Source of the DNA: Salpingoeca rosetta
Taxonomy: Eukaryota; Protista; Choanoflagellata
NCBI GenBank assembly: GCA_033442325.1
Contig: JAWQFM010000015.1
Span: 34,561 to 98,560, forward strand
Length of the DNA: 64,000 nucleotides
Direction of reading: 5' to 3'
Part shown: piece after piece, positions 1,547 to 30,109 of the stretch
Numbering within the stretch: position 1 is the first letter of the stretch
Layout: each line of letters begins with the position of its first letter
Program-made: the position numbers and the translations under genes
Notes under the pieces: generated by a model
What the model was told of the DNA's origin: nothing
Seen by the model: the letters and a program-made list of their open reading frames with translations, nothing else
Database searches by the model: none

Positions 1547-3021
1547 TCACAAACACATTCACACACATCTCTAGGGAGTTGCGGCAGGAGCTGCAAGCGC
1601 TGCATGAGCACGTGTCAACTCTTGATGCGGAGATTGCGGTGCTCAAGGCGGAGGTGGCGCAGCTGCACGTGACAGTGGCGGATCTGCAGCCGTACAAGGA
1701 CGCGCACGACGACGTGCAACGGAACTTGGGGACTCTCATCCCCGGGAACACGCCACAGCGTGGCTATCTCAAAGTGCCAATCACGGTGAGGACGTGGCGG
1801 CATTGGGTGGAATGGTCCAGTCTCAGGCATGCCATTCTTCGCTGGTCATACACAGGTGTGCGCCCACATCCAAAACACCCCCCCCTTTCCAAACACACAC
1901 ACACACACACACACACATACACACACACACTCAAACACACACACACACATTCACACGTGTTCCACCGGCAGCTGCGGTGTGGAATTACGCCATCAACAGC
2001 ACGGGGTCGCTGAAGGCGCAGCTGCTGCAGTTTCGCGTGTCGCTCGTGAGAGACATGGAAGCAGCGAACATGAGGGCTCTTCGTGATATGTACGTGGTAT
2101 TCGAGTGCTTGTTATCCTGTATGATCAAGAATTCCCCCCCCCCCACACACACACAGCATCAACTTGCTGTACATTTGACGCAACTCAATCTCAAACTCAT
2201 GTTGCTCTTGTTCTTGTTCGTGTTCGTGTTCCTAGGCGAGCTATTCTCTGGTTTCCACCACCATCGACATCATCATCCTTGTCGACATCATCATCAGCCG
2301 CAACGTCGGCGTCTCGCCAACACAGCTGCTCCTTGACACATCCACGTGCATTTGTGTGGGACCCACCCTCAACCAACGTAAGCTTTTCATGACAGCAGTG
2401 CCCAAGGGTACTGTCAGCACACAAGGAAATACATGTATGCACACACACAGCTGTACGCGTACATTCCTTCGCTTACACCACACGTTCTTGGATCACCGCA
2501 TGCTTGTGCGTATATGTGCAGCATGAAGAATCGATGAGCATGCTGAAGACGGTTGCACGGGAACTCACCATGACAGCAGCAGACATGTCGCGGTGAGTGG
2601 CGCGGCCTGAGTTGTGTGTGTATGTGTATGTGTATGTGCATGTGTATGTGTATGTGTATGTGTATGTGAATGTGTATGTGTATGTGTATGCGTATGTGTA
2701 TGTGTATGTGTAAGTGTAAGTGTAAGTGTATGTGTATGTGTATGCGTGTGTTTGTTTGGAGAGCGACGATGTGCTGCACCTCTCACGCTTCTCACGCTCC
2801 CTTGCACACCACTGCATCTCCTCCCTTTGCGTACCCATGTGCCGTGTTCGTTAGCGCGAAAGAGAAAGCGCAGCAGTTTGCTGATCGCGACACGGAGGCG
2901 TTTGAGGTCGTCGGCCAATTTTATCCGCAGGTGCTACTCCGTGCTCGTTGATTGATCCTTTCGTTGCCTTGATACCTGCACACACACACACACACACCAG
3001 CACGCATGTATGAATGTGTGT

Positions 3022-3078
<57 letters not shown>

Positions 3079-6051
3079 CGCACATGTTCACGCATGTGCT
3101 GTTCGACAGCTGAAGGAGCCGCATCTTCCGGCAACGCGGCCGGCGTCACTTGCTGTCGAACGGCGACCCGAACACGTCGATGAAGGTGCGATGTGCACAC
3201 ACACACAGCCACACACAAACACACAAACACACCAACACACACACACACAACCACACACACACAAACACACAGCCACACAGCCACACATTTGCATGCCAGC
3301 GATCAACTTGACCTGATAGTGTGTTTGCTTGTGCTTACACTCCATTCTCCCCCAAAACTCTCAACGGATCAACAATGGCAGACGACCACAAGTTGCTGTG
3401 GCGCCAGTTGGGCACGCGTCGCCAGTTTGAATCGCTGCCGCCAACGCTTCTCTCCATTGGTGAGAGGACGCAGCAATGGCCCCCATCATTAATCCCTGGT
3501 GGTGCTGCTGCTGCCATGTCGCTCGTTGCTGCCCATTACCACCGCACATCCTCACCCCGTCTGCATGCGTGTGCGTGTGCATGTATGTGCGTGTGCATGT
3601 ATGTGCGTGTGTCTTACCGTGGTTGTGCAGAGGTTGTGTATGCGTACATCACAGATCTTGCTGGCCGCGTGCTCGCCCACGACGTACAGCTCGCCTTTGA
3701 CACCGCCACCAGTGAGGACGACGTCATCTCGTTCCAGCAACACATGTACAACATGTTTGACGAACGCTTTCCCCACGCAGATGCCGCCACGCTCGCCATC
3801 CGCGACTTTCTCTTCTGTACGTGTGTATGTGTTTGCTCTCTGTGTGTGCGTGTCTTGCGTGCGTGCGTGTGTGTGTGTGTGTATGTTGCTCTCCTTCTCT
3901 ATTCGTTTCTGTGTGCTGTGTTCGTGCGCACATCCACGGTTCGCCCCTGAATTGCAGCGCTTCTTTCCCTCATATGTTGCGACCGTTGGTTCGTACTCGC
4001 GTGTGCACGTGGCCACTGACGGTGTGCGTTCGTTTGCACCTCAGCTGTGGAGCATCACAGCAGCGCCGATCCGCTCGTACAGCTGCTCTTCTTCTCGCTC
4101 GTCGGAAAGCAGGATGTGTCATCGCTTATGCACTACACAATCGTCCACATGGTGCGTCCTGTGCTTATCATTGTGTGTGTGTGTCGCGTGTTTGTATGTA
4201 TGCGTGTGTTGAATTATGCTTTGGCTCGTGATGATATGCGTGTGTGTGCACTCAAACAGAATCCATCCACCCATGCAGTCCATCTTCCATCCACCCGCGT
4301 TTCCTCACCGGGCACACGCTCGTCTCGTTCTTCCACACATGTTCAGTTGATCCACACGTTGCAGCTCTCAACGCCGCAACACCTCTCCTGGCTCATGACG
4401 GAGCTGTTTCCAGACTCGGTGGGGCAAGCGTTCGTGTCTCGTGGCATGCGCGTATTTGCGTACATTTGTGTCTCGTGGCATGCTCGTGTGCGTATGCGTG
4501 TGTGCATGTGTGCATGCGTGTGCGTGTGTGCATGCGCGTGTGTACGGTGCATTTCAGTGTGCTTTGTCCGGGTGTGCCAACTCGCTTATCTTCCATCCAT
4601 GCTTCCCCGTGCCAGCTTACATGACGCGTTTGCTGTACATACGTTCTTCCCCCCTCTCACCGTGTTCCCACTGCTCCAACCAGCACCTGTCACTGGACAA
4701 GCTGATGCTGGCGTACACGGGCTTTGCCGATGGCGCCCCGTCCTCCGATCGCATCTCCCGCTTTTATCTCCGCGAAACCGCTGCGCGCGACTGGAATCCA
4801 GCAGCAGCCGAGGTGGAAGGGATGATGGAAGAGGAGGGACGGGGGTGTGCGTGGTTGCTCTGTGTGGTTGCTCTATGTGGTTGCTCTGTGTGTGCGTATG
4901 TGTGCGTCTCTGTGTGTGTGCGTGTGTGTGCGTGTGTGTGCGTGTGTGTGCGTGTGTGCGTGTGAATGTTCGTGGGCATGGTCGTGTGCACGCACGACTG
5001 CGTTTCCAAGTACATCCTCTTTCCTAACAGTCACCACTACCACCACCACCACCACCACAACTGACACGTCATGGCCACCGCCATAGATTGTGCGCGTTGC
5101 TGCGGAGGTGGCCGGTGCGCCGCCAACGGGCTCGAAACCGCTCAGCGTCATCAAGTGCGAACGCATCAAGCACGCGCTCCATCCACACGTTCCCGACCAG
5201 GTATGCGTGTGCGTGCGTGTGTGTGCATTTCGTAAGTGGCATGTGCATGCACTCTGACGGCTGCGAGATGCTCGGTCTCTTGGGTCGTGCTTTGGTTGGT
5301 TGACTGGATGCTTCTTTGGTTGGTTGCTTGATTCATTGATTGCATTGATTGCATTTCCCACCTCCTTGGTATCATGTGGAATGTCCTGCACACAGGTGCT
5401 GCGGCTACTCTACGAACAATCCGCCAAGATACATGGGTATGTGTGAATGTGTATGTGTGTGTGTGAAGGTGTGTGCGTGTGCTTGTACCAGTGAATCATG
5501 CTGTGTGTCGTGTCTCTCGTGGCTGCGGCTCTCTGCATTGTCGTTCTCGTCACACACACACACACACACACACACACTCTCTCTCTCTCTCTCTCTCTCT
5601 TTCTTTCTCTCTCTCTACTGCAGGGTGGATGCTGAGTTGCCGTCGAGTGTGTGCACGTGGCTGCTGCTCCACGCACGCTTGTTGTTTGAGACGGAAATGG
5701 TTCGACTCAGCCTCAAAGACAGACTGGTACGTCCTCTCGTGCGTGTATGTGTTTGTGTGCATGAATGTGTGTTTGTGTTTGTGTGTTGATGATCATCACG
5801 ACATGACATCACCTTTGCTCAAACTGGTGTTGCGTTCCGTTCGGTACCCTCGCTACTGCAACTCACATTGGCTGCCCTTCGCTGCTTCCTGCTTCCGTTC
5901 ATATGTCACACGACAAACGCAACCAACACAACCGCAACCAACAAAACAGGACGGGCTGTCTGAACAGCAACTGCTGGTGAACAAGCGGAGCCGCCTCGTG
6001 CAGCTGAAGCAAGAGCTCGCACCAAGAAGTGGACGGGCAAGCACGTCGTGA
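63..6051 (+). CDS. Multi-exon uncharacterised coiled-coil protein, possibly TSNAXIP1-like
   Basis: Exons join through GT-AG introns, e.g. 63-320 (MSETT...GHLK) and 564-706 ([18 protein letters not shown]). Heptad-rich exons follow ([18 protein letters not shown]; [29 protein letters not shown]), then helical exons ([28 protein letters not shown] / [21 protein letters not shown]). Last exon ...[15 protein letters not shown] ends at 6051. Exon phases at 4850-5440 are uncertain and the family call is weak. Confidence 0.7.
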
Positions 6052-14789: not shown

Positions 14790-17700
14790 GCAGACGTACG
14801 CATGGGCAAAGTTCTTGTGTGCGCGGTTCTCGTATGATTTGCGCTTCCGTCGGATGGTGCTGTCAACGCACGCAACATGAAACACGCAAAAGGCAGTGGG
14901 CACGAGTGAGCAGGGAGGTGCAGGCAGACATTACAGGTGATGGGTTTCGCGAGAGCAGAAGCGATAGACAATCCAGTGTTGCGTGTGTGCGTGTGATGGA
15001 AATGATGACCGCAGCACTGACCGCTTGCTCTTCTCGCGGTACTCGATGATGTTGCGGCGAACCATGCTGAAGATGCGCTCCCGAAACACGTTGCCCTCGG
15101 GCTGAGCGGCCGCGACAACAGCATGCACGCGTTAGTGGCCATGCACAGCTTGGATGAGCAATACGCGGGATACGCCCGCTGTGGCAGAAATAGCACACAC
15201 ACACACACACGCACACATGCGCGCGTACGCACAGCACCAGCAGTAACACCAGCAGTGACAACGACAGCAGCAAGCGCACCTTCATTTGGCGAAGAGATGG
15301 TGTGAGCTCGTCGGTCAGCTTGACGGGCAGTGGGGGCTGCCTGTATGCGGCAAGCACGACGGGCGGAGACAAGCGAGTTGTGGCGATGGTGGTCAGGCGA
15401 TGAGCACCACGCAAGCAAATCACGCTGGGAAAAGTGAAAGCAACCAGTGCCGTACAATCACAAACTGCAACACAATCTCCAAACGCACACAGACACAGAC
15501 ACACACACACATATTCGCACACACACAACACAAACACAACGCGCACGCGAGACTGACTTGATCTGGAACTTGCTGAGACGGCGTGGGCGGGCGAGGCGGT
15601 CGAGTGCGCTGCGTTGCCGGTGCTCGCGTCGGCGCCGATACCGCTCATCCTGCTCGTCCAGCGCTTTGCTGATGGGCTTCAACTGCGAATACTGGCGCAT
15701 GCGCAGGCGATGGCGCTTGCGGGCCTGCTGTCGTCGCATGCGCCGCTCATGTCGCAGCTGCCGGTTGCGCTGCGCCTTTGTCCTGGCGGCGTCGGCGGCG
15801 GCGGTGATGGCGGTGGTGATGGTGGTGGTGGGTGATGAGCAATATGATGGAGCAATTGAGGGCGGAAACATGGAAGAAGCACGGCAAGTTGTTGCTTGCA
15901 TGCACTCATGCAATAAACAAAAACAAAGTGAACAAACAAAGTGAACAGCGTCCACAAGCAAACAAACAGGTTGGGCAAACACACGAGCAGTACATGGTGG
16001 TACGCACTTCCGCTCTGTGACTTTCTTGGTTCGCTCCATGCCTGGTTCCGGCACCTCCAGGCCACTATCACCGTCACCCTCCTCACCCTCGTCACTGTCG
16101 TCATCGCGGTCTTCACCGGCGGCCTCACGTCGCTGCCGCTCAAGATCGCGTGCCACCTGCACCATCTGATCGCGCTGCGCTGCTGCTGGATTCACGTTTG
16201 CAGCCCGCGGCGCTCGCCGCTGTAACCTCGCTTGCCGCTGGCGATGTGATGTGACGTGTTGTGTTGTGTTGTGTTGTGTTGTGCGGATGTGAGACGATGG
16301 CGTGAGGGCCAAGGACAATAGCGACCAAAAGCTTTGCACACGCACACATTAACGCAGCACACACACACACACACCCTTGCATACAGCGTGACGTACGCGG
16401 TCTGCGAGGATCTCTGTCGCTGCCGCAGCAGCAATCAGTTTCCTGTGCGCATCGTACTCCGGGTTGTACGACTGGCCCTGCAGGGGCCGCTCCACAGCTT
16501 GCTGGTTCAGCACAGTTTCTGCAGCACATACAACGTCCAGATATCAGTTGTGGAGCAGGCATACAACAACGCGCGAAACCACACACACACACACACACTC
16601 GCTCACTCACACACACTCACACTCACACACACACACTCACCCACACTCACACACACGCACAAGCACAGCCACCAGAGTGACTCCCCGACTCACCCACCCA
16701 CACCCACACCCCCACACACACCCACACACACCTGGTCCCTTGCGCTGTGATTTGGACTGTTTGAGCTTGGGTGTGTGTTCTTCGCTTGCCCAGATGTCAA
16801 AGACGGGTTCGTCTGCAGTGCTACCCTCCTGCACCTGCGTTGCTTCCTCCTGTTTCTTCTTGTTCTTGTTCTTGTTCTTCTGCTTCGCGTCTGCTGCTGG
16901 CGCTGCGCTTCCTGTGATGCCCGTTGAGCCTGAGGCACTGCTGCCTGGTTTGCGTGCGGCCTTGCTGCGGGTGGGCTTCACGGTGCGCACGGCTTTGATG
17001 AACTTGTTTGAGGAGGGGTGGTACCTGGTGCGCAGCTCCTCCGCCTTCTGGCGGGCCTTGAACTTGCGGCCCACTTGTGGCGTGTCGCCCATGGGGGTCA
17101 CCATCTCCGCAAAAAGCGCTTCATCCGGCGCCTCATGCACAAGTCCACTGATCCACCAATAACAACATGTGAGGATGCATTTGTGTGCGCATTTGTGTGT
17201 GTGTGTGTGCATGTATGCACGATTGCGCGCATCGCTGCTCAATGTGTTGCTGGTAAAACACAGGCACACGCAGGCATGGACACACGACAGATGCAAAGCA
17301 GTTGGTGCGCACAGGGGCATCAAACTTACCCTGTACGCATTTCATGCGACACTTCATCGCGGTGTGTTCTGTCAGAAGCGATCGCGCAAGGAGAAGTGGA
17401 GGTGAATCAACCAAGCACATCCAGCACATGCACGCACACACAAAGCCAGCAAGCAAGCAAACAAGCGAGCTCCCAAGCAAACTGTCAAGCTCACGAGCGA
17501 ACAGCCATACCCAAACCGCACACGTACGCACGCACGCACACACACACACACGCATCTACACACACGCACACACACACACACATACACGCACACACACTCA
17601 TCTACACACACGCACACACGCACACACGTACACACACAAGACAACCATGCACTCACTCGACGGCGGAGAGGAGGATTTCGGTGTGTTTGCGGATGTTCTT

Positions 17701-17853: not shown

Positions 17854-18464
17854 GATGGCTGCTGGGTCTGGATCGACGCACGCTGCAAACCACGCTGCTT
17901 TGTCTCGTCTTGTTTCCCTTACACGTGCAGTGCGGACGATTCACGAATGTCTTCCACGATACAGCGTAACCCGACACCCACCAGCAACCAACTAATTGAA
18001 AAAAAAAAAGTGTGTGCTGCTCACTTTGCATTGTGGTTGGTTGGTTTGGTCTGTGTTTTGTTTTCCCCCTTGCCCCACACCACCACCACAGAGCAGCCAC
18101 ACCAACAACAAAACCTAAACCCACCCCAAACACACAACCCACCTGACGGGCGTCCTTGTTCGATCAAACCTCCCCCTCCCTCACTGCCTGCCTGGCTGGC
18201 TTGCCTGGCTCGCTCTCTTCACACGGGTGCATTCCACCTCGTTGTCAGCCAGCACACGAGCACAGATACATACACACATACATACACACGAATACAGCCG
18301 CCTCGCGCACAGCGCCTGCGTCGGTTGCAATTTTCATCCATCCAGTGAGACCGCAAGCAAGTCCACTCGCTCCCGTTTGTCGAGACGCGGGCAAACAATC
18401 ACAGCAGTGGCAGCAACTGTAGCAACTGTAGCTTTTGTTCCCTGTCCCCGCGACACAACCAACC

Positions 18465-18794
18465 ATGCCAGTCCATGCATGGGGGACTGGCGAGAATGAC
18501 GCGCAACCTCCAGAGTTCAACGTCATCCACGTCACCGTGCACCGCTCGCGTGAATATGCCTTTGGCTTCACCCTCGGCTCCACTGGTGCGTTTTGCGGTG
18601 CGAGTGCTTCGGGAAGGGGAGGGGGGTGAAAGCGGCTGTTGATGTGCTCTTCGTGTGTTGCATTGCTCCCATGCACACACGCTCACACACACCTTCACGC
18701 ACAAACAAACACATACACATACATACACATACACACACATATACACATACACACATTCACACGCACTCACACACGCGCACACACTCACATACAC

Positions 18795-18826
<32 letters not shown>

Positions 18827-21800
18827 TCACTCACACATACACACGCCGACGCATGCCAACAGCGGAGAAGCTGCATGTGGTGTCGTCTGTGACGGCAGCA
18901 GGCCCTGCGTTTGGTCTGCTCCAGGAGGGCGACATTGTCGAGGCCATCAACGGCATCACCACCGCCAACCTCTCCCACCGCGCAGTGCCACGCATGATTG
19001 GCAGCAAGAAGGTGCTCAACCTTCGCCTGCGGCGGCCCCTTGACTCTGGCCAAACGTCGTCCCCCGCGTCCTCTGCCTCCTCCTCGGCCGCCACCGTATC
19101 GGATACGTCGCGCCCGCGCTCCTCGCGCCTCAACTTCATTGCGCAGTCCGGGCCCATCGGCACGCCAGCGCGCAGCATCGTGGACGAGCTGAAGCTGCGC
19201 TACACGCCGCAGCAGTACAACTCGCCCGCCTCCGACGCAGCGGGCCCGCCGGAGTTTGCAGAGACGCCGCTGCCAGGCACTGCGCCGCAGCCAACGGGTG
19301 ATGACAACACGGCAGCTGGCGCCAGTGGCGACGAGATTGTCCCCGTACAGCGGCGGCTTGATGGCAACGCAGCAGCACCAGCACCAGCCATGCAGACACC
19401 GCGCAGTGCCGTGCGCTCAGACCGCCTCCCGCCACTCAACTTCTCGGTGAGTACGCGGATACACTTGTGCCTCTGTACTCGTCCTTGCGTGCCTGTGTGC
19501 TTGTTTGTAGTATGTGTGTTGGTTGTGTGATATGTGTGTGTGTGTGTGAGTGTGTGTGTGTGAGTGTGTGAGTGTGTGTGTAACAGGTGTGGTGAAGAGT
19601 GCACGTGCTCCTGCCAACGTGCACACGTGTGCAACATCGTTGCGCATAGTTTTGTTTTGTATTTTAAGCATTGCTTTGCAACGCATCCCCGTGGCAATGT
19701 CGCTTATCGCTGCCACACACACACATTCTCACACACATATTCTCACTCACACACTCACACACACACACACACTCACTCACTCACTCACTCACTCACTCAC
19801 TCACTCACTCACTCACTCACTAACACACACACATTCTCACTCACTCACTCACTCACTCACTCACTCACTCACTCACTCACTCACTCACTCACTCACTCAC
19901 TCACTCACTAACACACACACACACATTCTCACTCACTTCCCCCCTACCTTCTCCCCTTCCGTTCCTGGCCCACCACAGCAAGAGGAGAGCAGCCTGCTGA
20001 ACACGTCTGCGGACGCCAGCCATGCCCAGCGCAGCCGCATGGACCTGAGCCCCATCACCCCGGCCAGCACCGTCAGCGCCATGCGCTCCCAGCCAACAGC
20101 AGCCCGCCGCCGCTCCAGCCAGCTCGCAACATCAACCCCGCAGACTGCTGCCGCACCTGCCACCACCACCACCGTCAGCGATGCACCCGTGACGTCTGCC
20201 GCGTCTGCGCCAACCTCAACCATGCCCACCTCAGGCCCCATCGAGAGCGTGTTCATCCAGCGAGTGGCCGGCCAGCGTCTGGGCCTGCGCGTCGTAGGCG
20301 GCCTCGACACCCAGCTCATGGCCGTTTTTGTTGATGGCATCACCGAAAATTCGGCGGCAGCGGCGTCCAACATCCAATATGGCGACCGGCTGCTGGCCGC
20401 AGACGGCGTGTCGCTGCTCAACCAGTCGCGGGACCGCGTGGTGGACATCCTGCGGGGAGCAGGGTCGACCCTCACGCTGGTGGTGCAGCACATTGGCGCC
20501 GACCAGTGGCACGACATCAAGGCTGAGGCCGCATACCGCGTGGAGATGCGCCACCCGCACGCCTTTGCCGTCCGCGAGCTTGTCCTGCCGCTGCTCAGCA
20601 GCGAGCCAACAGCAACGTGCACGCGCGGCGAAGTAAAGACCGTCACCCTCTCCACCGACGACGACTGGGTGCAGGTCTCTGGCGGGTGCGGCAGCGTCCT
20701 CGGCGGCTTCTTCGTCACGCGTGTTGGCGACGGTGCTGGGGCGCCCATCGCCGTCGGGCACCGCGTCATCGACGTCAACCAGCGGTCGTTCGTCCTGTCC
20801 AAGATGTGGGACCTGCAGCAGCTGGCGGAGAACCTCGCCACCCCCGTCCACCTCACCGTCCAAGTCGTCGATACCCAGCAGTGGGCCCGCATCTGCGATG
20901 CAGCCGAGTTTGACCTCGTTGCAGACACGCGCAACAGCGCATTTGTCGGCGGCGCTGCCAAGCTGCGGCCACAGCACGACCAGCAGCAGCGGCAGCAGAG
21001 GATGAGTGTTGCCTCCACAGCGAGCTCCACCCCGTCCGGCCACCCGCTCACGTCCATGTTGTTCCCAGCACCGCCGCCGCCATCGTCGTCGTCACGAACC
21101 AGCCCGCGCCGCGCGTCACGCGAGACAGCCGTGGTGAGCATGAACGGTGGTGTGCGCACTGTTCAACTCACACGTACGGAGGACGGCACGTTCGGCTTCA
21201 CCCTCATTGGGCCAAGCGACCCGGCCCAGCGCAACAGCCACGTGGAGGGCGTGTATGTGAAGGAGCTGACGTGCGCAGAGCCGATTGAGGCCGGCCTGTT
21301 CATTGGCGACCGCATCCTGGCCATCAACGAGCACGACGTGACGTCCGAGCTGGCAAACGCCGTCATTGACCGCATTGCGTCGCTCGACCGCATGACGCTC
21401 GCCGTGGAGAACAGCCCACGGGCGCTGGCGCTGCTTGAGGTTGAGCGGCGGAAGGCCGGCGAGCCGCGACTCGTCACCGTCACCAACATCAGGCGGTACG
21501 GGCTCGGCATCGACCTGCTCGCCTCGCTCGACGCAACGGCATCCGACCTCGACAACAGCAGCAGCGGCACGGTTGGCCCCGCGTACGTGGCTGCAGTTGA
21601 CCCGAGCGGCGCCATTGGGCGGGACGGGCGCATCAAGGCCGCAGACCAAATACTCATGATCGACGGCCAGCGCGTGCAATCGCCGCAGCACGCGGACAGG
21701 CTGCTGTCCACCAACCGGGACACCATGTCCCTCGTGGTGCGCATCTCGGATGCCGGGTACGACGCTGTTCGCCAGGCCCTGCTGCACACCACCCTCGATA

Positions 21801-24800
21801 CGGAGCTCGCTGGGCCAATTCGCACCTTCCAGCTGCCGGACACAGACAAGCTTGGTCTCATACTTGCTGGTGGCAGCGACACGGCGTTCTGTGGCGTGTT
21901 TGTGCAAGGGGTGAAGCCCAACTCCCCCGCTGCAGAGCTTGGCATTGTGGCCGGTGACCTGGTGCTGTCGCTTGACGATGCGGGCATGCTGCGGCGCTCG
22001 CGTGCAGACATGGTCGAGACCTTTCACCGCAACGCCCGCGGCGCACAGCTGCGTGTGATGCGGCTTGGCGCTGGGCTGTGGAACAAGTACCAGGCGGTGT
22101 GCTCCCGCACGGGGATGGCACGCCCCAATCTGCCGCCAACCACCCTGCCGCTGACCAAGGGCACCCGCACGTCTCTCAGCAGCACGGGGCCCATTCTCGC
22201 CGTGGACGTGTACCGGGAGCCGAACCAGCCGTTTGGGCTGAAGCTGATTGGCGGCGTGCAGCAAGGCATGGACACATTCTTCGTGACGGGGGTGGAGCAG
22301 GAAGGGCCATGCTTTGGCTTCATCCAGCCAGGCGATCGCATCCTTGAGGTAAGCAGGCAGCCAGCTGACACCAGATGCTGCTGTTCTTTGCCTATGTTTG
22401 TTTGTTGTGTTTTGTGGATAGTCGGGGAGGATGTCGAGGAGGAGGAGGAGGAGTTGTTGCGCAGTACATGACTGCCCACAATCACGCACACACACATACA
22501 CACACACACATACACGCGCGCACACACACACGTACACAACACAAACACACACACGTACATGACCCAACACAAATGCACATACACACACAAACACGAACAC
22601 ACACTCGTACACGATCCATCACAAACGCACATACACACAAACACACTGACGTGTCCATGCAAACCCTCTGCCTTATCCTACCTTGCGCAGGTGAACAACC
22701 ACGCGCTCGTGGGCGCGTCCATGCAGGATCTTCTGCGGCTGATTGGCGCGACCGCAACCGCGCTGGAGGTGGTCGTGCAGCGCACAGGTCGCGAACAGTG
22801 GGAGGACATCAAGACCACCATGGACAACATCGACATCCAGCTGCAGGAACAGCAACAGCAGCAGCAGCAAGAACAACAGCAACAGCAAGCAAGTGCCACA
22901 TCGCCGCCAGCAGCAAAGGTGCTGAAGCGAACGCTGTCGCGGGAAAAAGGGCGGCTTGGTCTCGGCATTGCTACGGTGCCGGGCGCAGGCACAAGGATTG
23001 GCGCCGTGGACTCCGACACAGCGCGCCGGCTTGGGCTGAAGGAAGGGCAGGAGATTGTGGCGATCAACGGCAGAGACATCAGCGGCCTGGCGCATGAGGA
23101 TGTGCTGCGGCTGCTGCACGAAGCCAACGAGTCTGTGCAGATTGAGGTGCGGGAGGCGGAACCACAGCACGTGCAGGTGCAGCGCTTTGACGGCCGGTTT
23201 GGATTCACAGTCATGACCACCAAGCAGAATGAGGACGGCAGCGGGTGCAACGGCCTGTACGTGCACACGGTCACCAACCCGACCACAGCACTCAAGCCAG
23301 GCATGCGCATCATTGGCATGTGCGGCGAAGACATGCATGACGCAGACTCTGCACGATTCCAGCGCCTCCTCATGGCTGTGACCGGCGATGAGATTGTGCT
23401 TGACGTGCTGCCGCCGCTGCCGTCTGCACCATCATCGCGCCCGCAGTCCGCGGCACACGACGCCTCCAGGGCCCGGCTGCAGTCGCACGCCGGCGCCAAC
23501 TGGAAGGACATGGAGGTGCTCACGTTCACCCTCGAGCGCAGCAGCGGGCGCCTTGGGCTCGCGGTTGCAGCACACTTGACAGAGGGCCGCTTTGGCGTGT
23601 TCGTTGCTAGCGTCAGCAACGCAAACGCGCGGGAGCGGGGCGTGCGGCGTGGCATGCGGCTGCTGGCGGTGAACGGCACAGATGTGCAGCGCGCAACCCG
23701 CGACCAAGCTGTCACCGCCCTCAAGAAGGCTACGGAACCCATCATCATCAAGTGCGCAATGCTGCCGCACACCCGCAACGTGGTGGTGCACACGAAGGAC
23801 ATCACCGCACGATCGTCGCCCTTCCGGCTGCAGAGCACGCCGGGCGTCATGACCCCTGTGTTCCTTGTGCTGAAGGAGGACCAGACCAACGCCACGGCAC
23901 AGCTGGACGGCGTGCACGGCGGCGCCATCACCGCTGGCGACCGCATCCTCTTCATTGGCGACGAGTCGGCCATCCTCGCATCACAGGGTACGCGAACGTG
24001 TGTGTGTATGTGTTTGTGTGTGTGCGCGCGTGTGTGTGTGCGTGTGTTGTGCTTGTGGTTGCGTGTCGTTGGTTCACCAATTGCTCGTTCTGTTTCACCG
24101 CTCGCCAACAGCGTCGCTTGTTAGTCCTCCAAACCACTGTTGCACCAGCGTCTCAAACACCAAACTGTACTTGTTATGCACTTTCTGCCTCCTCACGTCC
24201 TGCTCATTCACAACCCCGCCCCCTCCAACGCATTATATCCACACGACAGAGCAAGTGAACGGCATGCTGGCCGAGGCTGGCAAGGCGGTGACGCTGATGG
24301 TGGCTCGCGATAAGGACATGTGGCGGCTGTTCGAGCCAAGTGCAGCCGCTGCTCCTGCTCGCACGCTCTCCACACCTTCGCAATCACCATCACCATCGCC
24401 ACGCCGCGGCACCTCCCTCCGAAAGCGCATCTTCAGCCTCTCGCGCAAGAAGACCAACCGGTCGGGGACGGTGACTGTGCGGGCAAAGCGCATTCGCCTG
24501 AGGCGTATCGATGGCAAGTTTGGCGTGACGGTTGCGGGTGATACCAGCCGCCGCGGTCGCGGGGTGTTCGTTGCCGGCGTGAAGAATCTCGATGCAGAGA
24601 AGCAAGGACTGGCACGCGGCATGCGCATCATGGAAGCTGACGGCGTCGACACGACCCAGTCCACACAGACACAGGTGCTTGACATCTTCAGCAACGCCGA
24701 GGACACGATTGTGCTGCAGGTCATCAGGGACGTGCACGGGTTTGCTGAGTTTGAGGCCGGGCTGTCACGACACGCGTCTACGCGCCCAACACCAGCGACC

Positions 24801-27800
24801 ACTCCTGTCCGCTCTCCTGCGCCCGGGTCATCCCGTCTCCCCTCGCAGACAGATTCTGTGTTTGAGAGCGAGGGTGCCGCTGCCAGCACCAGCACTGCCA
24901 CCAGCACACACAAGCGCATTATTGTTCGCCGGCAAGAAGGGCGACTTGGGCTTGGGATTGTTGGCGAGTCAACGGCACGTGGGTTTGGCGTGTACATCAG
25001 CAACGTCGCCAACACAGACGCAGCGGCGCAGGGCCTGGTGGCAGGGATGCGCATCATGACGGTTGATGGAGAGGATGTGCGGGAACTGTCGCAGGGAGAC
25101 GTGCTACAGAAACTGGGGAGCAAGCGTGGGGACGAGGTTGTGCTTGGGGTGATTGGTGATGATGGCGGGTACTCGCGGTTTGTTGAGGTTGCATCGACCC
25201 AGACATCGGGAACACCGTCTGTGTCCGAGTCACAAGGAAGAGCGGCAGCGGGGCTGGCGTCTGTGACGGAGGAGGCAGAGGAGAGTGATGACGACGACGA
25301 CGATGACGATGATGGTGATGTGGCCCGTGCCGAGCAGAAGGCGGTGCAAGAGAAGGCGCAAATGCAGCATGAGGAATCTCGCACCGTTGAGAACCAGCAG
25401 CAACCTGAGCAACAGGCAGCAGCAGCAGCTAATGTGGAAGAAGAGAACGCCAACGAGGCCGAGGAACAGCGCCACGCTCAAGAGCACGAGCGACAACAAC
25501 CATCGCAACAACATCCACAGCAAGAGGACCAGCAAGAGGAAATGGAACGTGAGCAGGATGAGGTGGAGGTGGAGGTGGAACCGTTGCCAGTTGCTGAAGC
25601 CGCTGTCCGCCAAGCCGTGCCCATCGCAGCAATTGCAGAGGAAGATGAGCACGAGCACGAAGATCACCATGACGAGGTGCAAGCCAGCGATGAAGCAGAC
25701 GAGGATGGGTCATCCGACAGTGACTCGGGTGACGACGAAGATGCACAGCGCATTGTTGTTCGCCGGCAAGACGGGCGGCTCGGGCTTGGTTTGGTTGGCG
25801 AGTCGATGGCACGCGGATATGGCGTGTACATCAGCAACGTCGCTAACACAGATGCAGCAGCACAGGGGCTGGAGGTTGGAATGCGCGTGCTGAGCGTGGA
25901 TGGCCACGACACGCGGGACGCGACACAGAGCGAGGTGCTGTCGCTCGTGACGAGCAACGATCACGATGAAGTCATCTTCACCGTCATCCCAGACGACGGC
26001 GGGTTTGCCAAGTTTGCGCACGCATCGTCACTGCCCGGATCAGCTGCTGCAACGCCGCGCCGGCAGTCGAAAGAGGAGACAGCAGCTGCTGACGTGTCTC
26101 ATGAGCACCCCGACCTGGTGAAGCAGCCCGCGATGGACATGAGCCTGTACTCGCGGCGACAGAGTAGCGTAAACGTGCAGCCCATCACCGTTCGCCGGCA
26201 AGAGGGGCGACTTGGGCTGGGGATTGTTGGCGAGTCAACAGCGCGTGGGTTTGGCGTGTACATCAGCAACGTCGCCAACACAGACGCAGCGGCGCAGGGC
26301 CTGGTGGCAGGGATGCGCATCATGACGGTCGACGGAGAGGATGTGCGGGAACTGTCACAGGGGGACGTGCTGCAGAAGCTGGGAAGCAAGCGTGGGGACG
26401 AGGTTGTGCTTGGGGTGATTGGTGATGATGGCGGGTACTCGCGGTTTGTTGAGGTTGCATCGGCCCAGACATCGGGAACACCGTCTGTGTCCGAGTCACA
26501 AGGAAGAGCGGCAGCGGGGCTGGCGTCTGTGACGGAGGAGGCAGAGGAGAGTGATGACGACGACGACGATGACGATGATGGTGATGTGGCCCGTGCTGAG
26601 CGAGAGCAGCACCAGGAGGAACAGGAACAGGAACAGGAGGAAGACTGGGGAGAGGAGAATGAGGGGGAACCGGACAGGGGACAGCAAGATCGTCACGAAG
26701 ACCAAGACCGCGACCAGCACCAAAAGCAAGAGAAGCATCAGGGGCAAGAGGAAGTAGAACAGGAACACCGGCAGGAGGAGGAGGTTGCAGTAGTTGCTGA
26801 AGCCGCTGTCCGACAATCCGAGCCCATCGCAGCAATCGCAGAGGAAGCGGAAGAGCAGCAAGAGCAGCAAGGGCAGCAACGCCACGATGAAAGTTCTGAC
26901 GATGCAACAGAAAGACGAGAGGTCGGTGAGCATGACACTGGCAACGGTTCGAGTGCTGATGTTGCTGATGCTGCTGCTGATGATGATGAGGATATTGATG
27001 ATGATGAAGGCTTTCAACGTGTCGTTGTTCGCCGGCAAGATGGGCGACTTGGGCTTGGGATTGTTGGCGAGTCAACGGCACGCGGATATGGCGTGTACAT
27101 CAGCAACGTCGCCAACACAGACGCAGCGGCGCAGGGCCTGGTGGCAGGGATGCGCATCATGACGGTCGATGGAGAGGATGTGCGGGAACTGTCACAGGGA
27201 GACGTGCTGCAGAAACTGGGAAGCAAGCGTGGGGACGAGGTTGTGCTTGGGGTGATTGGTGATGATGGCGGGTACTCGCGGTTTGTTGAGGTGGCATCCG
27301 CCCAGACATCGGGAACACCGTCCGTCTCTGATCGCGGGCGTGTGGGTGCACACGACAGCGATTTCCATCACGAACATCAGCCGCTTCCCGAGGAACGCGA
27401 GAGTGCAGCGTCGAGCAGTGACGATGACTACGAAGACGGATCACTGGCTGACAGCGGTGTACAGCGCATTGTCGTTCGCCGGCAAAATGGGCGGCTCGGG
27501 CTTGGTTTGGTTGGCGAGTCGATGGCACGCGGATATGGCGTGTACATCAGCAACGTCGCTAACACAGATGCAGCAGCACAGGGGCTGGAGGTTGGAATGC
27601 GCGTGCTGAGCGTGGATGGCCACGACACGCGGGACGCGACACAGAGCGAGGTGCTGTCGCTCGTGACGAGCAACGATCACGATGAAGTCATCTTCACCGT
27701 CATCCCAGACGACGGCGGGTTTTCTCGCTTCGGCACCCCGACGTCTCCCGTTCGCGCACCCCAGCAGCAGCAGGAGCACCAACAACAGCAGAGCGATGCT

Positions 27801-29646
27801 GCCGCGGCCAGGGATGGCGATACAAACGATGAAGAGGAGACAGTGCCCGATGCCCCGCCAGCGCTGGTGGAGTGCGACGTGACGAGGACGGACGGCCGGC
27901 TCGGTATTGGTCTGCTGGGTCATCCAACCCAGCAGGGTCTCGGCGTGTACCTGTGCTCTGTCACCAACCCCGTGGCCATTGCTGCGGGCATGAAGAAGGG
28001 GCTGCGGCTGGTGCAAGTCAACGACAAGGACCTGACGTCGGCAACGCAGCGCGAGGCATTCAGCATCCTCACCACAGCCACGGAGCCTGTGCACCTCGCC
28101 GCACGCGTGGACACGGACGGATATGCGCGCATTCAGGGTTTGGCAGACAACGCTGACGCCGGCACCAAGACACACGGGACCCCGCAACCCGTACCACCGT
28201 CGCTGCCGATTCGAGTCCTGAACGTGGATGTTGAGAAGGACCGCGGGCGGCTTGGTTGCGCCATTGTCGTGCATGGGCAGTCTGTGAAGAACACGTACAT
28301 CAACAGCGCCCACCCGCGCCACGCGGGCCGCGTACAGCCGGGCGATTGTGTGGTTGCCGTCAACGGCGAGGTGATTGTTGGCAAGAGCCAGAACGTGGTT
28401 GTTGGCCTGATCCAGGCTGCTGGCGATGTTCTTCGCTTCACCATTGCCCGCTGCCCCAACGTGTCCCTCCCCGTGCGTGACGGCAGCTTCCAGTTTGACG
28501 TCACCGCCGCGCCCACCGCGGCCCGTGTCTCCATGCCATCTGCAGATGTGGCTGCGGTTGCCTTTGAGGACATTGGGTCTGGCGCACCGACCGTCGCCAA
28601 GGACCACACCCCGCTGCGTCGTGGCGATGTTGTTGCCGCAATTGACTCGAACATGCTCGTCGACAGCACCAGCAGCGACGTGACAGCGTTGGCGGCGCAG
28701 TCTGGTCGCGCTCGCACCACATTTACCGTCTGCCGTGTTGGCGCAGAGGTGTGTGGTTGTGTGCGTGTGAGAGAGAGTGAGTGTGTGTGTGTGTGTGCGT
28801 ATGTGTGCATGTGTGAGAGAGAGTGTGTGTGTGTGTGTGTCCGTGTGTGTGTGTGTTTTTCTTTTTTTTCTGCGTCGTGTGTGTAATGTACGCTCGTTGC
28901 CTGCTCTTATGCTGCTACATCTCTGCAATTTGTTTTTCCTCATTGCTTTGCGCTGTTGTGTCTGTGGCAGGTCCCCGCCTCACCTTCCCCGAGCGCTGCG
29001 GGTCGGTCCAACACCGACGCCGCAAGTCAGCAGCAGTCGTCTCCAGCCGAGGGCGCGCAGGACAACGCCAACGATGATGATGATGGCAACAACGCCAGCA
29101 CTAATGCCAACATCAACGACACCGACACCGACAGCGCAGAGCCCGATACAGCGGTGATTGTGCTGCACAAGGGCTCGCAGGGCTTTGGGTTTGTTCTCAA
29201 GGCGAAGGACAAGCCTGGCCCGCTGACGGTGGGGCGTGTGCGTGAGGGCGGTGCGGCGTCCAACGAACCGCGGCTGAAGAAGGGCGTTCGCGTCCTCAGT
29301 ATCAACGGCACCGACACATCCGTCGTCACAAAGCGTGAGTGCAACAGGCGTGTAGAACACGTACTTGTGTGTGTGTGTGTGTGTGCGTGCGTGTGTGTGT
29401 GTGTGTGTGTGTCTGTGTGTGCGCGTGTGCCTGCGCTGATATGGGTTGCTTGCTCTTGGTCCTTTCAAACGCTCTTCTCAATGTTTATCACGTTCATGTG
29501 TCGTTGTTACTCCACCACTCACACTGGCCTTGCCCATCATCTTCAACTGCGCGCTTTCGATGACGACAGAGGATGCTGGGCGCCTCATCTCGCGCGCCGG
29601 CGACACGATGGAGCTCAAGATTGTGCTCGATTCATCAACTGCGTGA
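18465..29646 (+). CDS. Giant multi-PDZ scaffold protein (~3,103 aa, ~21 PDZ domains)
   Basis: Phase-consistent exons 18465-18585, 18863-19446, 19979-22348, 22691-23987, 24250-28748, 28971-29334, 29570-29646 (9,312 nt). Repeated GLGF-type loops (FGFTL, LGLRV, LGIDL, LGLIL, FGLKL, LGLGI, FGFTV, LGLAV, FGVTV, LGIGL, FGFVL) each precede a GD/GMR-I-x-x-V-N/D-G segment. Confidence 0.93.
24924..27722 (+). repeat. Internal near-identical PDZ-coding duplications in order A-B-A-A-B
   Basis: A units at ~24924-25335, ~26190-26601 and ~27027-27322; B units at ~25745-26007 and ~27461-27722. They are near-identical at the DNA level with scattered substitutions. Confidence 0.97.
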
Positions 29647-30109
29647 TGTGAGGCATTCGTGTGTGGAATTGCTGCACTCATTTTGTGGACATGTGTGCAG
29701 TGCACATGAATGTGCTTTGTCCCCGTGAAGTTTTTCTATTTGTTGTTTGCACAAGGCTGTCAAGACTGTCCCTTCACAATGCCTGCTTTGTACACTTTCT
29801 CACACATTATTTCTCCTTCTTCCTGCTCCTCCACATTCTGCCCTTCATTCTGTGCCTCTGTGGCTGGCAGGTGTCAGCTGCTGTCCTCCAGAAGAGATGA
29901 CAGTTTTGCTTGCAACTGCTGTGTTTCCTGTCGATGTTTCTGTTTGTGTGGCATTGCGTGGTGCGTGGAGAAGAGGGGGTGGTAACATGATGAGCACTTG
30001 ATAGGCGATAGTTGCATGCTGTGCTTTCGTGCGTGGCAATCCAAGGTTTTGTGTGCTTTTGTGCAACAGGGTGCGTGTGCGACGAAGTGTCGCTGTGGTT
30101 TTGTCTCGC

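What the first reader, a model, noticed from the sequence alone, without database searches (positions are those of the whole stretch)
18465..29646. Giant ~21-PDZ scaffold, longer than animal MPDZ/MUPP1
Seen: a phase-consistent ~3,103-aa product with about 21 PDZ repeats (three degenerate, near 20630, 23770 and 28460) and no other recognisable domain (no L27, SH3, GK or TM). Established: MPDZ has 13 PDZ domains and PATJ has 10. Inference: an independently expanded cortical, junctional or collar scaffold in a unicellular relative of animals, able to cluster many C-terminal ligands. This is the strongest candidate for an undescribed system in the window.
Basis: partly seen in the sequence, partly recalled or inferred. 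Interest (0 to 1): 0.8.

Follow-up and report, generated by a model that had tools for sequence, protein, structure and literature searches.

The report
Giant 21-PDZ choanoflagellate scaffold gene
This is a real seven-exon gene of the choanoflagellate Salpingoeca rosetta (already annotated as uncharacterised PTSG_05802) that encodes a 3,103-residue protein made of about 21 PDZ peptide-binding modules; it belongs to a choanoflagellate family that built its long PDZ array separately from the animal MPDZ/PATJ scaffolds, and its function is untested.

Summary
Seven exons (18465-29646, + strand) with six phase-consistent GT..AG introns give a 3,103-aa product. It is identical to the public protein XP_004992694.1 / PTSG_05802 of Salpingoeca rosetta, named only 'hypothetical' or 'PDZ domain-containing'.

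- **PDZ count:** there are 21 PDZ-sized units. Seventeen pass a Pfam PDZ-family cut-off on their own, and four (3, 9, 11, 20) are sub-threshold. Profile comparison supports units 3, 9 and 11 as PDZ-like; a confident AlphaFold model also supports unit 3. Only the C-terminal half of unit 20 is recognisable.
- **Other domains:** no L27, SH3, GK, TM or other Pfam domain was found.
- **Not an MPDZ/PATJ orthologue:** it lacks L27 and positional colinearity. A domain tree allows full separation of animal and choanoflagellate units.
- **A conserved family:** Monosiga brevicollis A9V625 also has 21 units. Barroeca monosierra and Tara Oceans scaffolds (about 19 units) carry colinear orthologues. Units 1-7 and 19-21 are conserved, and the middle expanded lineage by lineage.
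- **Duplicated units:** the near-identical S. rosetta copies differ by synonymous changes only or mostly, so they are real and under constraint.

Other notes of this scan cover parts of this same gene on this same window, not other DNA. Verdict: real and correctly read, moderately interesting, and a new member of a known kind.

The parts
18465..18585 (+). Exon 1: start codon and first half of PDZ1
   Evidence: ATG at 18465; donor GTGCGT at 18586
18863..19446 (+). Exon 2: second half of PDZ1 plus a disordered Ser/Pro/Ala-rich linker
   Evidence: Acceptor CAACAG; joined PDZ1 scores 30.9 bits for PF00595
19979..22348 (+). Exon 3: PDZ2-PDZ6 and the first part of PDZ7
   Evidence: Single open frame; environmental and Barroeca ORFs end exactly at this exon's 3' border, Sr aa 1026
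22691..23987 (+). Exon 4: rest of PDZ7, PDZ8-PDZ10, and the first part of PDZ11
   Evidence: Joined PDZ7 scores 30.9 bits
24250..28748 (+). Exon 5: end of PDZ11 and PDZ12-PDZ20, including the A-B-A-A-B amplified units and two acidic linkers
   Evidence: Single 4.5-kb open frame
28971..29334 (+). Exon 6: acidic/Asn-rich linker and most of PDZ21. It has no Met, so it cannot start a separate protein.
29570..29646 (+). Exon 7: last helix and strand of PDZ21, tail ...DSSTA, and the stop codon
   Evidence: Joined PDZ21 scores 43.3 bits
18516..19041 (+). PDZ1 (aa 18-100, split by intron 1), loop YAFGF, alphaB1 His
   Evidence: PF00595 30.9 bits; one-to-one with Mb unit 1 and Bm unit 1
20240..20497 (+). 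PDZ2 (aa 323-408)
   Evidence: PF00595 55.3 bits
20627..20869 (+). PDZ3 (aa 452-532): PDZ fold with a non-canonical carboxylate-binding loop (DDDWVQV), conserved in all orthologues
   Evidence: PF00595 17.9 bits; hhalign 97% with orthologues; AF2 pLDDT 89.5 with all top Foldseek PDB hits being PDZ domains; alignment A1
21146..21415 (+). PDZ4 (aa 625-714)
   Evidence: PF00595 29.8 bits
21461..21748 (+). PDZ5 (aa 730-825), with a long betaB-betaC loop
   Evidence: PF00595 30.0 bits, PDZ_6 30.7 bits
21812..22069 (+). PDZ6 (aa 847-932)
   Evidence: PF00595 24.9 bits, PDZ_2 30.9 bits
22187..22786 (+). PDZ7 (aa 972-1057, split by intron 3)
   Evidence: PF00595 30.9 bits on the spliced sequence
22910..23152 (+). 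PDZ8 (aa 1099-1179); 3-residue linker to PDZ9
   Evidence: PF00595 37.6 bits
23162..23413 (+). PDZ9 (aa 1183-1266): GRFGF loop but a weak Pfam score
   Evidence: PF00595 13.5 bits; own HMM 24.3 bits; hhalign 95.8%
23504..23758 (+). PDZ10 (aa 1297-1381); 3-residue linker to PDZ11
   Evidence: PF00595 35.8 bits
23768..24311 (+). PDZ11 (aa 1385-1478, split by intron 4): degenerate N-terminal half with no GLGF-type loop
   Evidence: PF00595 20.3 bits on the C-terminal half; hhalign 95% over 60 columns; ESM atlas nearest clusters are all PDZ, score 0.93
24477..24731 (+). PDZ12 (aa 1534-1618), about 44% identical to units 13-17
   Evidence: PF00595 27.8 bits; identity matrix
24906..25169 (+). PDZ13 (type A)
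   Evidence: PF00595 35.0 bits; 98% identical to PDZ15 with 11 synonymous and 0 non-synonymous differences
25170..25739 (+). Acidic linker (190 aa, 61 Asp+Glu)
25740..26003 (+). PDZ14 (type B)
   Evidence: PF00595 34.4 bits; 98% identical to PDZ17
26175..26435 (+). PDZ15 (type A)
   Evidence: PF00595 35.3 bits
26436..27008 (+). Acidic linker (191 aa, 69 Asp+Glu)
27009..27272 (+). PDZ16 (type A with a B-like start)
   Evidence: PF00595 36.8 bits; 94% identical to PDZ13 and PDZ15
27456..27719 (+). PDZ17 (type B)
   Evidence: PF00595 35.1 bits
27861..28115 (+). PDZ18 (aa 2662-2746)
   Evidence: PF00595 26.6 bits
28200..28451 (+). PDZ19 (aa 2775-2858); 5-residue linker to PDZ20
   Evidence: PDZ_6 31.4 bits, PF00595 23.2 bits
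28467..28745 (+). PDZ20 (aa 2864-2956): the most degenerate unit; only the C-terminal half is PDZ-like and the fold is not confirmed
   Evidence: PDZ_6 16.0 bits; hhalign 70% alone and 95% with Mb unit 20, over 43-45 columns; AF2 pLDDT 48.9 with no significant fold match; ESM atlas named neighbours are PDZ-type, 0.90-0.91
29142..29634 (+). PDZ21 (aa 3015-3100, split by intron 6)
   Evidence: PF00595 43.3 bits; one-to-one with Mb unit 21

Best explanation
The locus is one seven-exon gene, Salpingoeca rosetta PTSG_05802. It encodes a soluble, acidic 330-kDa 'beads on a string' scaffold with 21 PDZ-type units and no catalytic, membrane or other interaction domain.

Shown here:
- Seventeen units pass a Pfam PDZ-family threshold on their own, and 18 have a canonical hydrophobic-Gly-hydrophobic carboxylate-binding loop.
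- Units 3, 11 and 20 lack that loop.
- Unit 3 is still predicted with confidence to adopt the PDZ fold, and it is conserved in every orthologue.
- Units 9, 11 and 20 each follow a canonical PDZ after only 3-5 residues.
- The protein belongs to a family conserved in craspedid choanoflagellates (M. brevicollis A9V625, Barroeca monosierra, Tara Oceans scaffolds). The family has one-to-one orthologous units 1-7 and 19-21, and a middle block that was amplified separately in each lineage.
- In S. rosetta the amplified copies (three type A, two type B) differ mostly at synonymous sites, so they are kept by purifying selection.
- The family is not an MPDZ/PATJ orthologue.

Inferred from what is established for PDZ scaffolds such as MPDZ/MUPP1, PATJ, GRIP and PSD-95:
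- Each canonical unit binds a short C-terminal or internal motif of a membrane or signalling protein.
- The array clusters many such partners at one cortical site.
- The identical copies raise valency for one abundant ligand class.
- The loop-less units act as packing partners in tandem supramodules rather than as binders.
- The two 190-aa acidic linkers act as spacers.

The ligands and the cellular location are unknown.
For: - **Gene model and identity:** the model is identical to the public protein.
- **PDZ calls:** Pfam per unit. An HMM from its own units finds exactly 21. Compared with a profile built only from animal MPDZ/PATJ units, 19 units taken singly score 93% or more. Unit 3 reaches 97% and unit 20 reaches 95% once orthologues are added. 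Shuffled controls score 1.5% or less. AlphaFold of unit 3 has pLDDT 89.5, and its top Foldseek PDB hits are all PDZ domains.
- **One gene:**
  - Introns 1, 3, 4 and 6 split PDZ domains whose halves only score when joined.
  - Exon 6 has no Met.
  - The independent gene models of M. brevicollis and B. monosierra are colinear with it: the M. brevicollis model along nearly the whole length, and the 1,583-aa B. monosierra model across Sr junctions 1-3.
  - A Tara scaffold carries all parts in the same order on one strand.
  - RNA-like runs hold 0.72-0.75 of the sampled words of 18300-24299, against 0.90-0.93 in DNA-like runs. About 0.72-0.74 is expected if the four introns are absent. The second half gives 0.69-0.71 against 0.82-0.83.
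- **Family structure:**
- **Selection on copies:** PDZ13 against PDZ15 shows 11 synonymous and 0 non-synonymous differences.
- **Not MPDZ/PATJ:** L27_2 is present in four animal proteins and absent in three choanoflagellate ones. There is no colinearity. AU test p 0.73.
- **Soluble and acidic:**
Against: - The word-share argument is indirect, and the tool only guesses that those runs are RNA.
- Intron 2 and intron 5 lie in disordered linkers, so domain continuity does not support them. Exon 3 has an internal Met (aa 255) that could start a shorter product.
- Unit 20 has no confirmed PDZ fold. The N-terminal half of unit 11 matches nothing.
- Binding, ligands and localisation are pure inference. 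Most units carry Gln, Arg or other residues rather than His at alphaB1, so ligand classes cannot be read off.
- DNA-like runs hold only 0.83 of the words of the repeat-rich half. This is unexplained and leaves some doubt about the exact copy number.
Confidence: 0.8

Rival explanations
1. The 3,103-aa model fuses two or more transcription units, or the main products are shorter isoforms. In that case no single protein carries all 21 units.
For: Introns 2 and 5 lie in low-complexity linkers and have no domain-continuity support. Exon 3 has an in-frame Met at aa 255. No read-level evidence could be obtained. All the comparison models are themselves predictions.
Against: Exon 6 has no Met. M. brevicollis and B. 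monosierra models, made independently, join PDZ1 to the rest. A Tara relative keeps the same order on one strand, and its PDZ1 exon and exon-3 equivalent lie in the same reading frame, aligned in a single tblastn HSP, Sr aa 33-1026. RNA-like runs hold about the exonic share of words over both halves.
Confidence: 0.1
2. It is a divergent orthologue of animal MPDZ/PATJ that lost the L27 domain and gained extra PDZ units, rather than an independent expansion.
For: After the choanoflagellate proteins, the best full-length hits are MPDZ and PATJ/InaD-like proteins from sponge to fish, with E-values of 1e-38 to 1e-28. Sr PDZ2 is the reciprocal best match of MPDZ unit 7 in three animals, and the two group loosely in the FastTree tree. 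Some sponge PatJ proteins also lack a detectable L27 (PMC5968619).
Against: The high full-length scores are sums over many PDZ units. There is no positional colinearity beyond the PDZ2/unit 7 match. Animal units group by position from sponge to chordate, while choanoflagellate units group among themselves. The tree with complete separation is not rejected and has a higher likelihood. L27_2 and MPDZ_u10 are absent. Best solved-structure matches of single units scatter over InaD-like, DLG, Scribble, GRIP, syntrophin and Erbin.
Confidence: 0.08
3. The count of 21 is inflated, because several units are relics that no longer fold as PDZ or because the near-identical A/B copies are an assembly artefact.
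For: Four units are below the Pfam thresholds. The unit 20 model is unreliable. DNA-like runs hold only 0.83 of the words in the repeat-rich half.
Against: Seventeen units pass on their own. Units 3, 9 and 11 are supported by profile comparison, and unit 3 also by a structure model. The A copies differ by 6-11 synonymous changes, so they are distinct loci and not duplicated reads. The degenerate units 3, 11 and 20 are present at the same positions in the Tara orthologue, and units 3 and 20 also in M. brevicollis.
Confidence: 0.05

Closest known systems
Monosiga brevicollis A9V625 / MONBRDRAFT_38169 (uncharacterised PDZ domain-containing protein, 2,772 aa)
   Same: It is the orthologue. It is colinear over nearly the whole length and also has 21 PDZ-like units by the same HMM. 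Units 1, 2, 4-7, 19 and 21 are best matches of the same-numbered S. rosetta units. [quoted passage not shown]
   Different: The middle block is built from different duplications. Mb units 11, 12, 13 and 15 form their own clade with no S. rosetta member, and it lacks the near-identical A/B copies and the long acidic linkers. Its annotated C-terminus looks mis-predicted.
Animal MPDZ/MUPP1 (L27 + 13 PDZ) and PATJ/InaD-like (L27 + 10 PDZ)
   Same: These are long PDZ-only arrays that act as multivalent scaffolds. They are the best-scoring animal proteins in sequence searches.
   Different: They have an N-terminal L27_2 domain, which links them to Pals1 in the Crumbs complex (PMC5968619). Here L27 is absent. 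There is no positional orthology of units and the units separate in trees. This protein has 21 units rather than 13 or 10. The Crumbs complex proteins are described as metazoan developments (PMC9729800).
GRIP1/GRIP2 (7 PDZ) tandem supramodules
   Same: From my own knowledge of the GRIP literature, not tested here: in GRIP PDZ1-2 and PDZ4-5, a PDZ that does not bind ligand packs against its neighbour and stabilises it. Here, units 9, 11 and 20 each follow a canonical PDZ after 3-5 residues; 11 and 20 lack the binding loop, while 9 keeps a GRFGF loop and is only a weak Pfam scorer.
   Different: No structural or binding test was made here. Sequence similarity to GRIP is limited to single units.

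Membership tests
PDZ domain superfamily (Pfam clan PDZ-like: PF00595, PF17820, PF13180) | Each unit matches a PDZ profile above the curated gathering score | tested here: met
   Met for 17 of 21 units: 1, 2, 4-8, 10, 12-19 and 21. Units 3 (17.9 bits), 9 (13.5), 11 (20.3) and 20 (16.0) are below it.
PDZ domain superfamily | PDZ fold (six strands, two helices) for the degenerate units | tested here: inconclusive
   Unit 3: met, with AF2 pLDDT 89.5 and top Foldseek PDB hits being Scribble PDZ1 and PSD-95 PDZ3, target-normalised TM 0.70-0.77 for the leading hits. Unit 20: the model is unreliable (pLDDT 48.9) and has no match. Units 9 and 11: not folded; hhalign gives 95-96%.
PDZ domain superfamily | Carboxylate-binding loop of the type hydrophobic-Gly-hydrophobic (GLGF motif) | tested here: met
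   Read directly from the sequence and the HMM alignment. It is present in 18 units and absent in units 3 (DWVQV), 11 (PFRLQ) and 20 (SFQFD).
PDZ domain superfamily | Binds C-terminal peptide ligands | not testable with these tools
   Needs peptide-binding assays.
MPDZ/MUPP1-PATJ family | N-terminal L27 domain (L27_2, PF09045) | tested here: not met
   L27_2 was found in Lingula, amphioxus and Oscarella MPDZ and in fish PATJ (31-51 bits). It was not found in the S. rosetta, M. brevicollis or B. monosierra proteins, which begin with PDZ1. No hit was found in three upstream + strand frames either.
MPDZ/MUPP1-PATJ family | Position-by-position orthology of the PDZ units (units group by position from sponge to chordate) | tested here: not met
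   Score matrices show no diagonal; only Sr PDZ2 and MPDZ unit 7 recur as a match. In the tree, animal units group by position and choanoflagellate units group apart. Complete separation is not rejected, p-AU 0.73.
MPDZ/MUPP1-PATJ family | MPDZ_u10 region (PF16667) | tested here: not met
   It is listed for fish MPDZ hits and not for P0001, and it is absent from the Pfam scan of P0001.
Choanoflagellate giant PDZ family (PTSG_05802 / A9V625) | Colinear orthology of units 1-7 and 19-21, starting with PDZ1 at the N-terminus, with degenerate unit 3 | tested here: met
   M. brevicollis, B. monosierra, Tara scaffolds L001-L003, and the unit 3 alignment A1.

The most novel reading that the evidence does not exclude
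Choanoflagellates have their own giant PDZ scaffold family, unrelated by descent to the animal MPDZ/PATJ arrays. Its PDZ number is actively tuned lineage by lineage: about 19 units in a Tara relative, and 21 in S. rosetta and in M. brevicollis reached through different duplications. New copies are kept under strong purifying selection, and pocket-less PDZ folds are conserved as structural partners. On this reading it would be a lineage-specific hub that organises many membrane-protein tails at one cortical structure such as the collar base or cell-cell bridges. That would make it a convergent counterpart of the animal junctional and synaptic multi-PDZ scaffolds.
Probability: 0.35. Interest if true: 0.55.

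Novelty: new member of a known kind. Interest (0 to 1): 0.33.

Why it matters
Multi-PDZ scaffolds organise junctions, polarity complexes and synapses in animals. A larger PDZ array that arose independently in the closest unicellular relatives of animals shows that extreme PDZ multivalency is not tied to tissues. It also gives a tractable case, since S. rosetta can be transfected and edited, for asking what such a scaffold clusters in a single cell. The recent copies under selection offer a natural experiment on valency. However, the gene is already annotated and its M. brevicollis orthologue is already catalogued, so what is added here is the family-level picture and not a discovery of the gene.

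Tried and rejected
2. **The search for homologous proteins** with P0001 region 1-1060 returned only the query itself and fish MPDZ/PATJ, and missed the M. brevicollis orthologue because its candidate list was truncated. It was not used again. I also judged a search for S. rosetta cDNA-derived fragments futile, because P0001's 90% cluster has a single member.
3. **AlphaFold of unit 20** with a two-sequence alignment gave pLDDT 48.9 and no fold match.
4. **Literature:** no paper names PTSG_05802 or F2UCU2. The supplements of the S. rosetta genome paper held here do not contain the id. The supplements of the two M. brevicollis PDZ papers are not held, so I could not confirm that the '20-PDZ' protein is A9V625.
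5. **Salpingoeca infusionum P0020** (2,278 aa) was considered as an orthologue and rejected, because it shows no colinearity.
6. **A hidden upstream L27 exon** was considered and rejected. Three upstream + strand frames have no Pfam hit, the orthologues also start with PDZ1, and the next gene upstream is a minus-strand Nop53-like ORF.
The PDB sequence search served as a partial substitute.

Full report

The window is GC-rich eukaryotic DNA. On the + strand between 18.4 and 29.7 kb lie five long open frames separated by CA/TG microsatellite-rich stretches. All five carry PDZ hits in Pfam.

Choosing GT..AG pairs that keep the frame gives seven exons: 18465-18585, 18863-19446, 19979-22348, 22691-23987, 24250-28748, 28971-29334 and 29570-29646. 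The six introns are 222-532 nt long.

An exhaustive HMMER search with exon 3 returned a 3,103-aa public protein (P0001). It is identical to my spliced model. It is Salpingoeca rosetta PTSG_05802 / XP_004992694.1 / UniProt F2UCU2, named only 'hypothetical protein' or 'PDZ domain-containing protein'.

**2. How many PDZ domains?**

By eye there are 21 PDZ-sized units. Several tests bear on the count.
- An HMM built from 11 of the units finds exactly 21 domains in the protein, even with all filters off.
- Scanned one unit at a time against Pfam, with the spliced protein used for units cut by introns, 17 units pass a gathering score. These are units 1, 2, 4-8, 10, 12-19 and 21.
- Four units are below threshold: unit 3 (17.9 bits), unit 9 (13.5), unit 11 (20.3, C-terminal half only) and unit 20 (16.0 for PDZ_6, C-terminal half only).
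- Against a profile made only from animal MPDZ/PATJ units, 19 units taken singly score 93-99% in hhalign. Unit 3 rises from 30% to 97% when its orthologues are added. Unit 20 rises from 70% to 95%, but over only about 45 columns. Shuffled controls stay at or below 1.5%.
- AlphaFold2 on unit 3 with a ten-sequence alignment (A1) gives pLDDT 89.5 and a PDZ topology plus a C-terminal helix. Its Foldseek hits in the PDB are all PDZ domains, led by Scribble PDZ1 and PSD-95 PDZ3.
- Unit 11's nearest ESM-atlas clusters are all PDZ families, with a score of 0.93.
- Unit 20 could not be confirmed. Its model is poor (pLDDT 48.9), it has no significant fold match, and its atlas neighbours are only weakly PDZ-type.

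Eighteen units carry a canonical hydrophobic-Gly-hydrophobic loop, and units 3, 11 and 20 do not. No other Pfam family reaches its gathering score; the only non-PDZ-clan hit, Hint at 18.2 bits on an unspliced reading frame, did not recur on the spliced protein. There is no L27 and no TM-like stretch. The protein is 330 kDa with pI 4.9, and 59% of its residues lie in PDZ units. It has two 190-aa linkers with 61 and 69 acidic residues.

**3. Is it one gene?**

The indirect evidence is as follows.
- Introns 1, 3, 4 and 6 cut PDZ domains. For PDZ1 and PDZ7 the halves score below threshold alone (20.5 and 19.7 bits) but above it when joined (30.9 bits each). PDZ21 rises from 35.0 to 43.3 bits when joined.
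- Exon 6 contains no Met, so PDZ21 cannot be a separate protein that starts there.
- Independent gene models of M. brevicollis (2,772 aa) and Barroeca monosierra (1,583 aa, partial) are colinear with the S. rosetta protein: the M. brevicollis model along nearly the whole length, and the B. monosierra model across junctions 1-3.
- Prokaryote-style ORFs called on genomic contigs of relatives end exactly at S. rosetta residue 1026, the exon 3/4 border. That intron position is therefore conserved.
- Tara Oceans scaffolds (L001-L003) carry all the parts in order on one strand. The matches are Sr aa 33-1026, 1017-1464, 1458-1655, 2382-2957 and 3017-3079.
- Runs that look like RNA hold 0.72-0.75 of the sampled 31-mers of 18300-24299, against 0.90-0.93 in DNA-like runs. 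By my arithmetic from the exon coordinates, about 0.72-0.74 is expected if the four introns and the upstream flank are missing. For 23900-29899 the shares are 0.69-0.71 against 0.82-0.83. The tool only guesses which runs are RNA, so this is supportive and not decisive.

**4. What family is it?**

The M. brevicollis orthologue A9V625 also shows 21 units with the same HMM. Unit-by-unit score matrices and a domain tree show one-to-one orthology for units 1-7 across Sr, Bm and Mb. Positions 19, 20 and 21 also correspond.

The middle of the array differs between lineages.
- Sr units 12-17 cluster with Bm units 9-10.
- Mb units 11, 12, 13 and 15 form a clade of their own with no S. rosetta member.
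- The Tara relative has about 19 units. These include the degenerate units 3, 11 and 20, but it has fewer A/B-type copies.

The family is therefore old within craspedid choanoflagellates. Its ends are conserved and its centre expands lineage by lineage, so the shared number 21 in Sr and Mb is partly coincidence.

In S. rosetta, units 13, 15 and 16 are 94-98% identical, and units 14 and 17 are 98% identical. They lie as five 300-nt DNA repeats spaced 834, 432, 837 and 447 nt apart. The copies are distinct at the DNA level and under constraint:
- unit 13 against 15: 11 synonymous and 0 non-synonymous differences in 82 codons;
- unit 13 against 16: 6 and 2;
- unit 15 against 16: 8 and 2.

This argues against an assembly artefact and for function.

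**5. Relation to MPDZ/PATJ**

After the choanoflagellate proteins, the best full-length hits are MPDZ and PATJ/InaD-like proteins from sponge to fish. Such scores add up over many PDZ units, so they overstate the relationship. The tests below argue against orthology.
- All four animal comparators have an N-terminal L27_2, and the three choanoflagellate proteins do not.
- There is no diagonal in the unit matrices. Only Sr PDZ2 and MPDZ unit 7 recur as a match.
- In the tree, animal units group by position from Oscarella to amphioxus, while choanoflagellate units group with each other.
- The tree that holds all 50 animal units on one side and all 47 choanoflagellate units on the other is not rejected. 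It has a higher likelihood than the free quick tree (p-AU 0.73).
- Best solved-structure matches of single units scatter over InaD-like, DLG, Scribble, GRIP, syntrophin and Erbin.

One caveat applies: the tree contains only these two families and has few columns.

The literature treats the Crumbs-complex proteins, including PatJ, as metazoan developments (PMC9729800). PatJ is recognised there by L27 plus PDZ domains (PMC5968619).

**6. What was already known**

- No paper in the library names PTSG_05802 or F2UCU2.
- The M. brevicollis orthologue appears in a PDZ catalogue. [quoted passage not shown] - Another M. brevicollis protein, A9UPI8, has at least 18 PDZ domains.

Giant PDZ arrays in choanoflagellates are thus on record as catalogue entries, but no function or family analysis has been published. 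My result on unit 3 refines the earlier judgement. The fold is predicted with confidence and the unit is conserved in ten relatives, but the binding loop is non-canonical in all true orthologues.

**7. How it most likely works**

The domain make-up, the canonical loops, the conservation and the selection on copies are all shown here. The rest is inferred from established knowledge of PDZ scaffolds.
- Each canonical unit binds a short C-terminal or internal motif.
- The array brings many partners together at one cortical site.
- The repeated identical units raise valency for one ligand class.
- The loop-less units 11 and 20 (and the weak-scoring unit 9, which keeps its loop) each follow a canonical PDZ after 3-5 residues. 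They probably act as packing partners, as described for GRIP tandems (my own knowledge, not tested here).

The alphaB1 position is His in only a few units. It is Gln through units 11-19, so ligand classes cannot be assigned by rule. The protein's own tail...DSSTA, could itself be a PDZ ligand, but this is speculation. Location (collar, junction, cortex) is untested.

**8. Verdict**

It overstates novelty, because the gene and its orthologue are already catalogued. It is also untested as to function. I rate this a new member of a known kind, of moderate interest.

Noticed in passing
window 18586-18862, 19447-19978, 22349-22690, 23988-24249, 28749-28970, 29335-29569: All six introns of this gene hold CA/TG-type or CTCA microsatellites. 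Translated in frame they give the THTHTH or CVCVCV runs that mark exon ends. One of them, at 18745-18781, tripped the read tool's filter.
   Followed up: partly
window 20490-28140 (after units 2, 3, 5-7 and 11-18): Fourteen of the 21 units are followed by a short conserved aromatic motif, for example G-x-x-Q-W-x-x-I or G-G-Y/F-x-x-F. In the AlphaFold model of unit 3 this is a helix (residues 95-105) with block-mean pLDDT of about 89-95, and PSD-95 PDZ3, which has an extra alpha-3 helix, aligns over 97-100 columns. This agrees with the scan's note s1-432598.
   Followed up: partly
window 24913-27762: Five in-register 300-nt repeats are arranged A-B-A-A-B. The fourth copy (PDZ16) starts like type B and continues like type A, which suggests a mosaic made by conversion or unequal exchange. 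This agrees with the scan's note s1-432597.
   Followed up: partly
window 23900-29899: DNA-like runs hold only 0.82-0.83 of the sampled words here, against 0.90-0.93 for 18300-24299. The reason is unknown. Possibilities are repeat collapse in Logan contigs, strain differences, or assembly differences in the repeat block.
   Followed up: no
window 29621-29643: The protein ends in ...LDSSTA. Ser at -2 and a small hydrophobic residue at 0 would fit a weak class I PDZ-binding motif, so self-binding or head-to-tail chaining is conceivable. Conservation could not be checked, because the M. brevicollis C-terminus looks mis-predicted and I did not examine the Tara scaffold for the last-exon equivalent.
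   Followed up: no
window 15461-16348 (minus strand): An open frame matches Nop53 (60S ribosome biogenesis, 39.6 bits). It is the probable upstream neighbour, transcribed divergently from the PDZ gene.
   Followed up: no
L001 608-10408 (Tara Oceans scaffold; also L002 and L003): An uncultured marine relative carries a colinear orthologue with about 19 PDZ units on an 11-kb scaffold. Its PDZ1 exon and exon-3 equivalent lie in the same reading frame, separated by one short interruption, unlike the 532-nt intron 2 of S. rosetta.
   Followed up: partly
P0153, P0154, P0008 and P0031 (environmental ORFs): ORFs from environmental (JGI/IMG and NCBI) records that align to several consecutive PDZ units of this protein, colinearly for the P0007 cluster (which holds P0153 and P0154) and P0008, are named 'S1-C subfamily serine protease', 'RseP' and 'CtpA/Prc' by their sources. 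These names probably come only from the PDZ hits, but I did not check the ORFs for protease domains.
   Followed up: no
P0006 (ENA, 2,196 aa): Another giant array has a FERM_C-like N-terminus followed by 13 PDZ units. Together with M. brevicollis A9V3B6 (2,600 aa) and A9UPI8 (at least 18 PDZ), it shows that several very long PDZ arrays are on record, two of them in M. brevicollis; the organism of P0006 is unknown.
   Followed up: no
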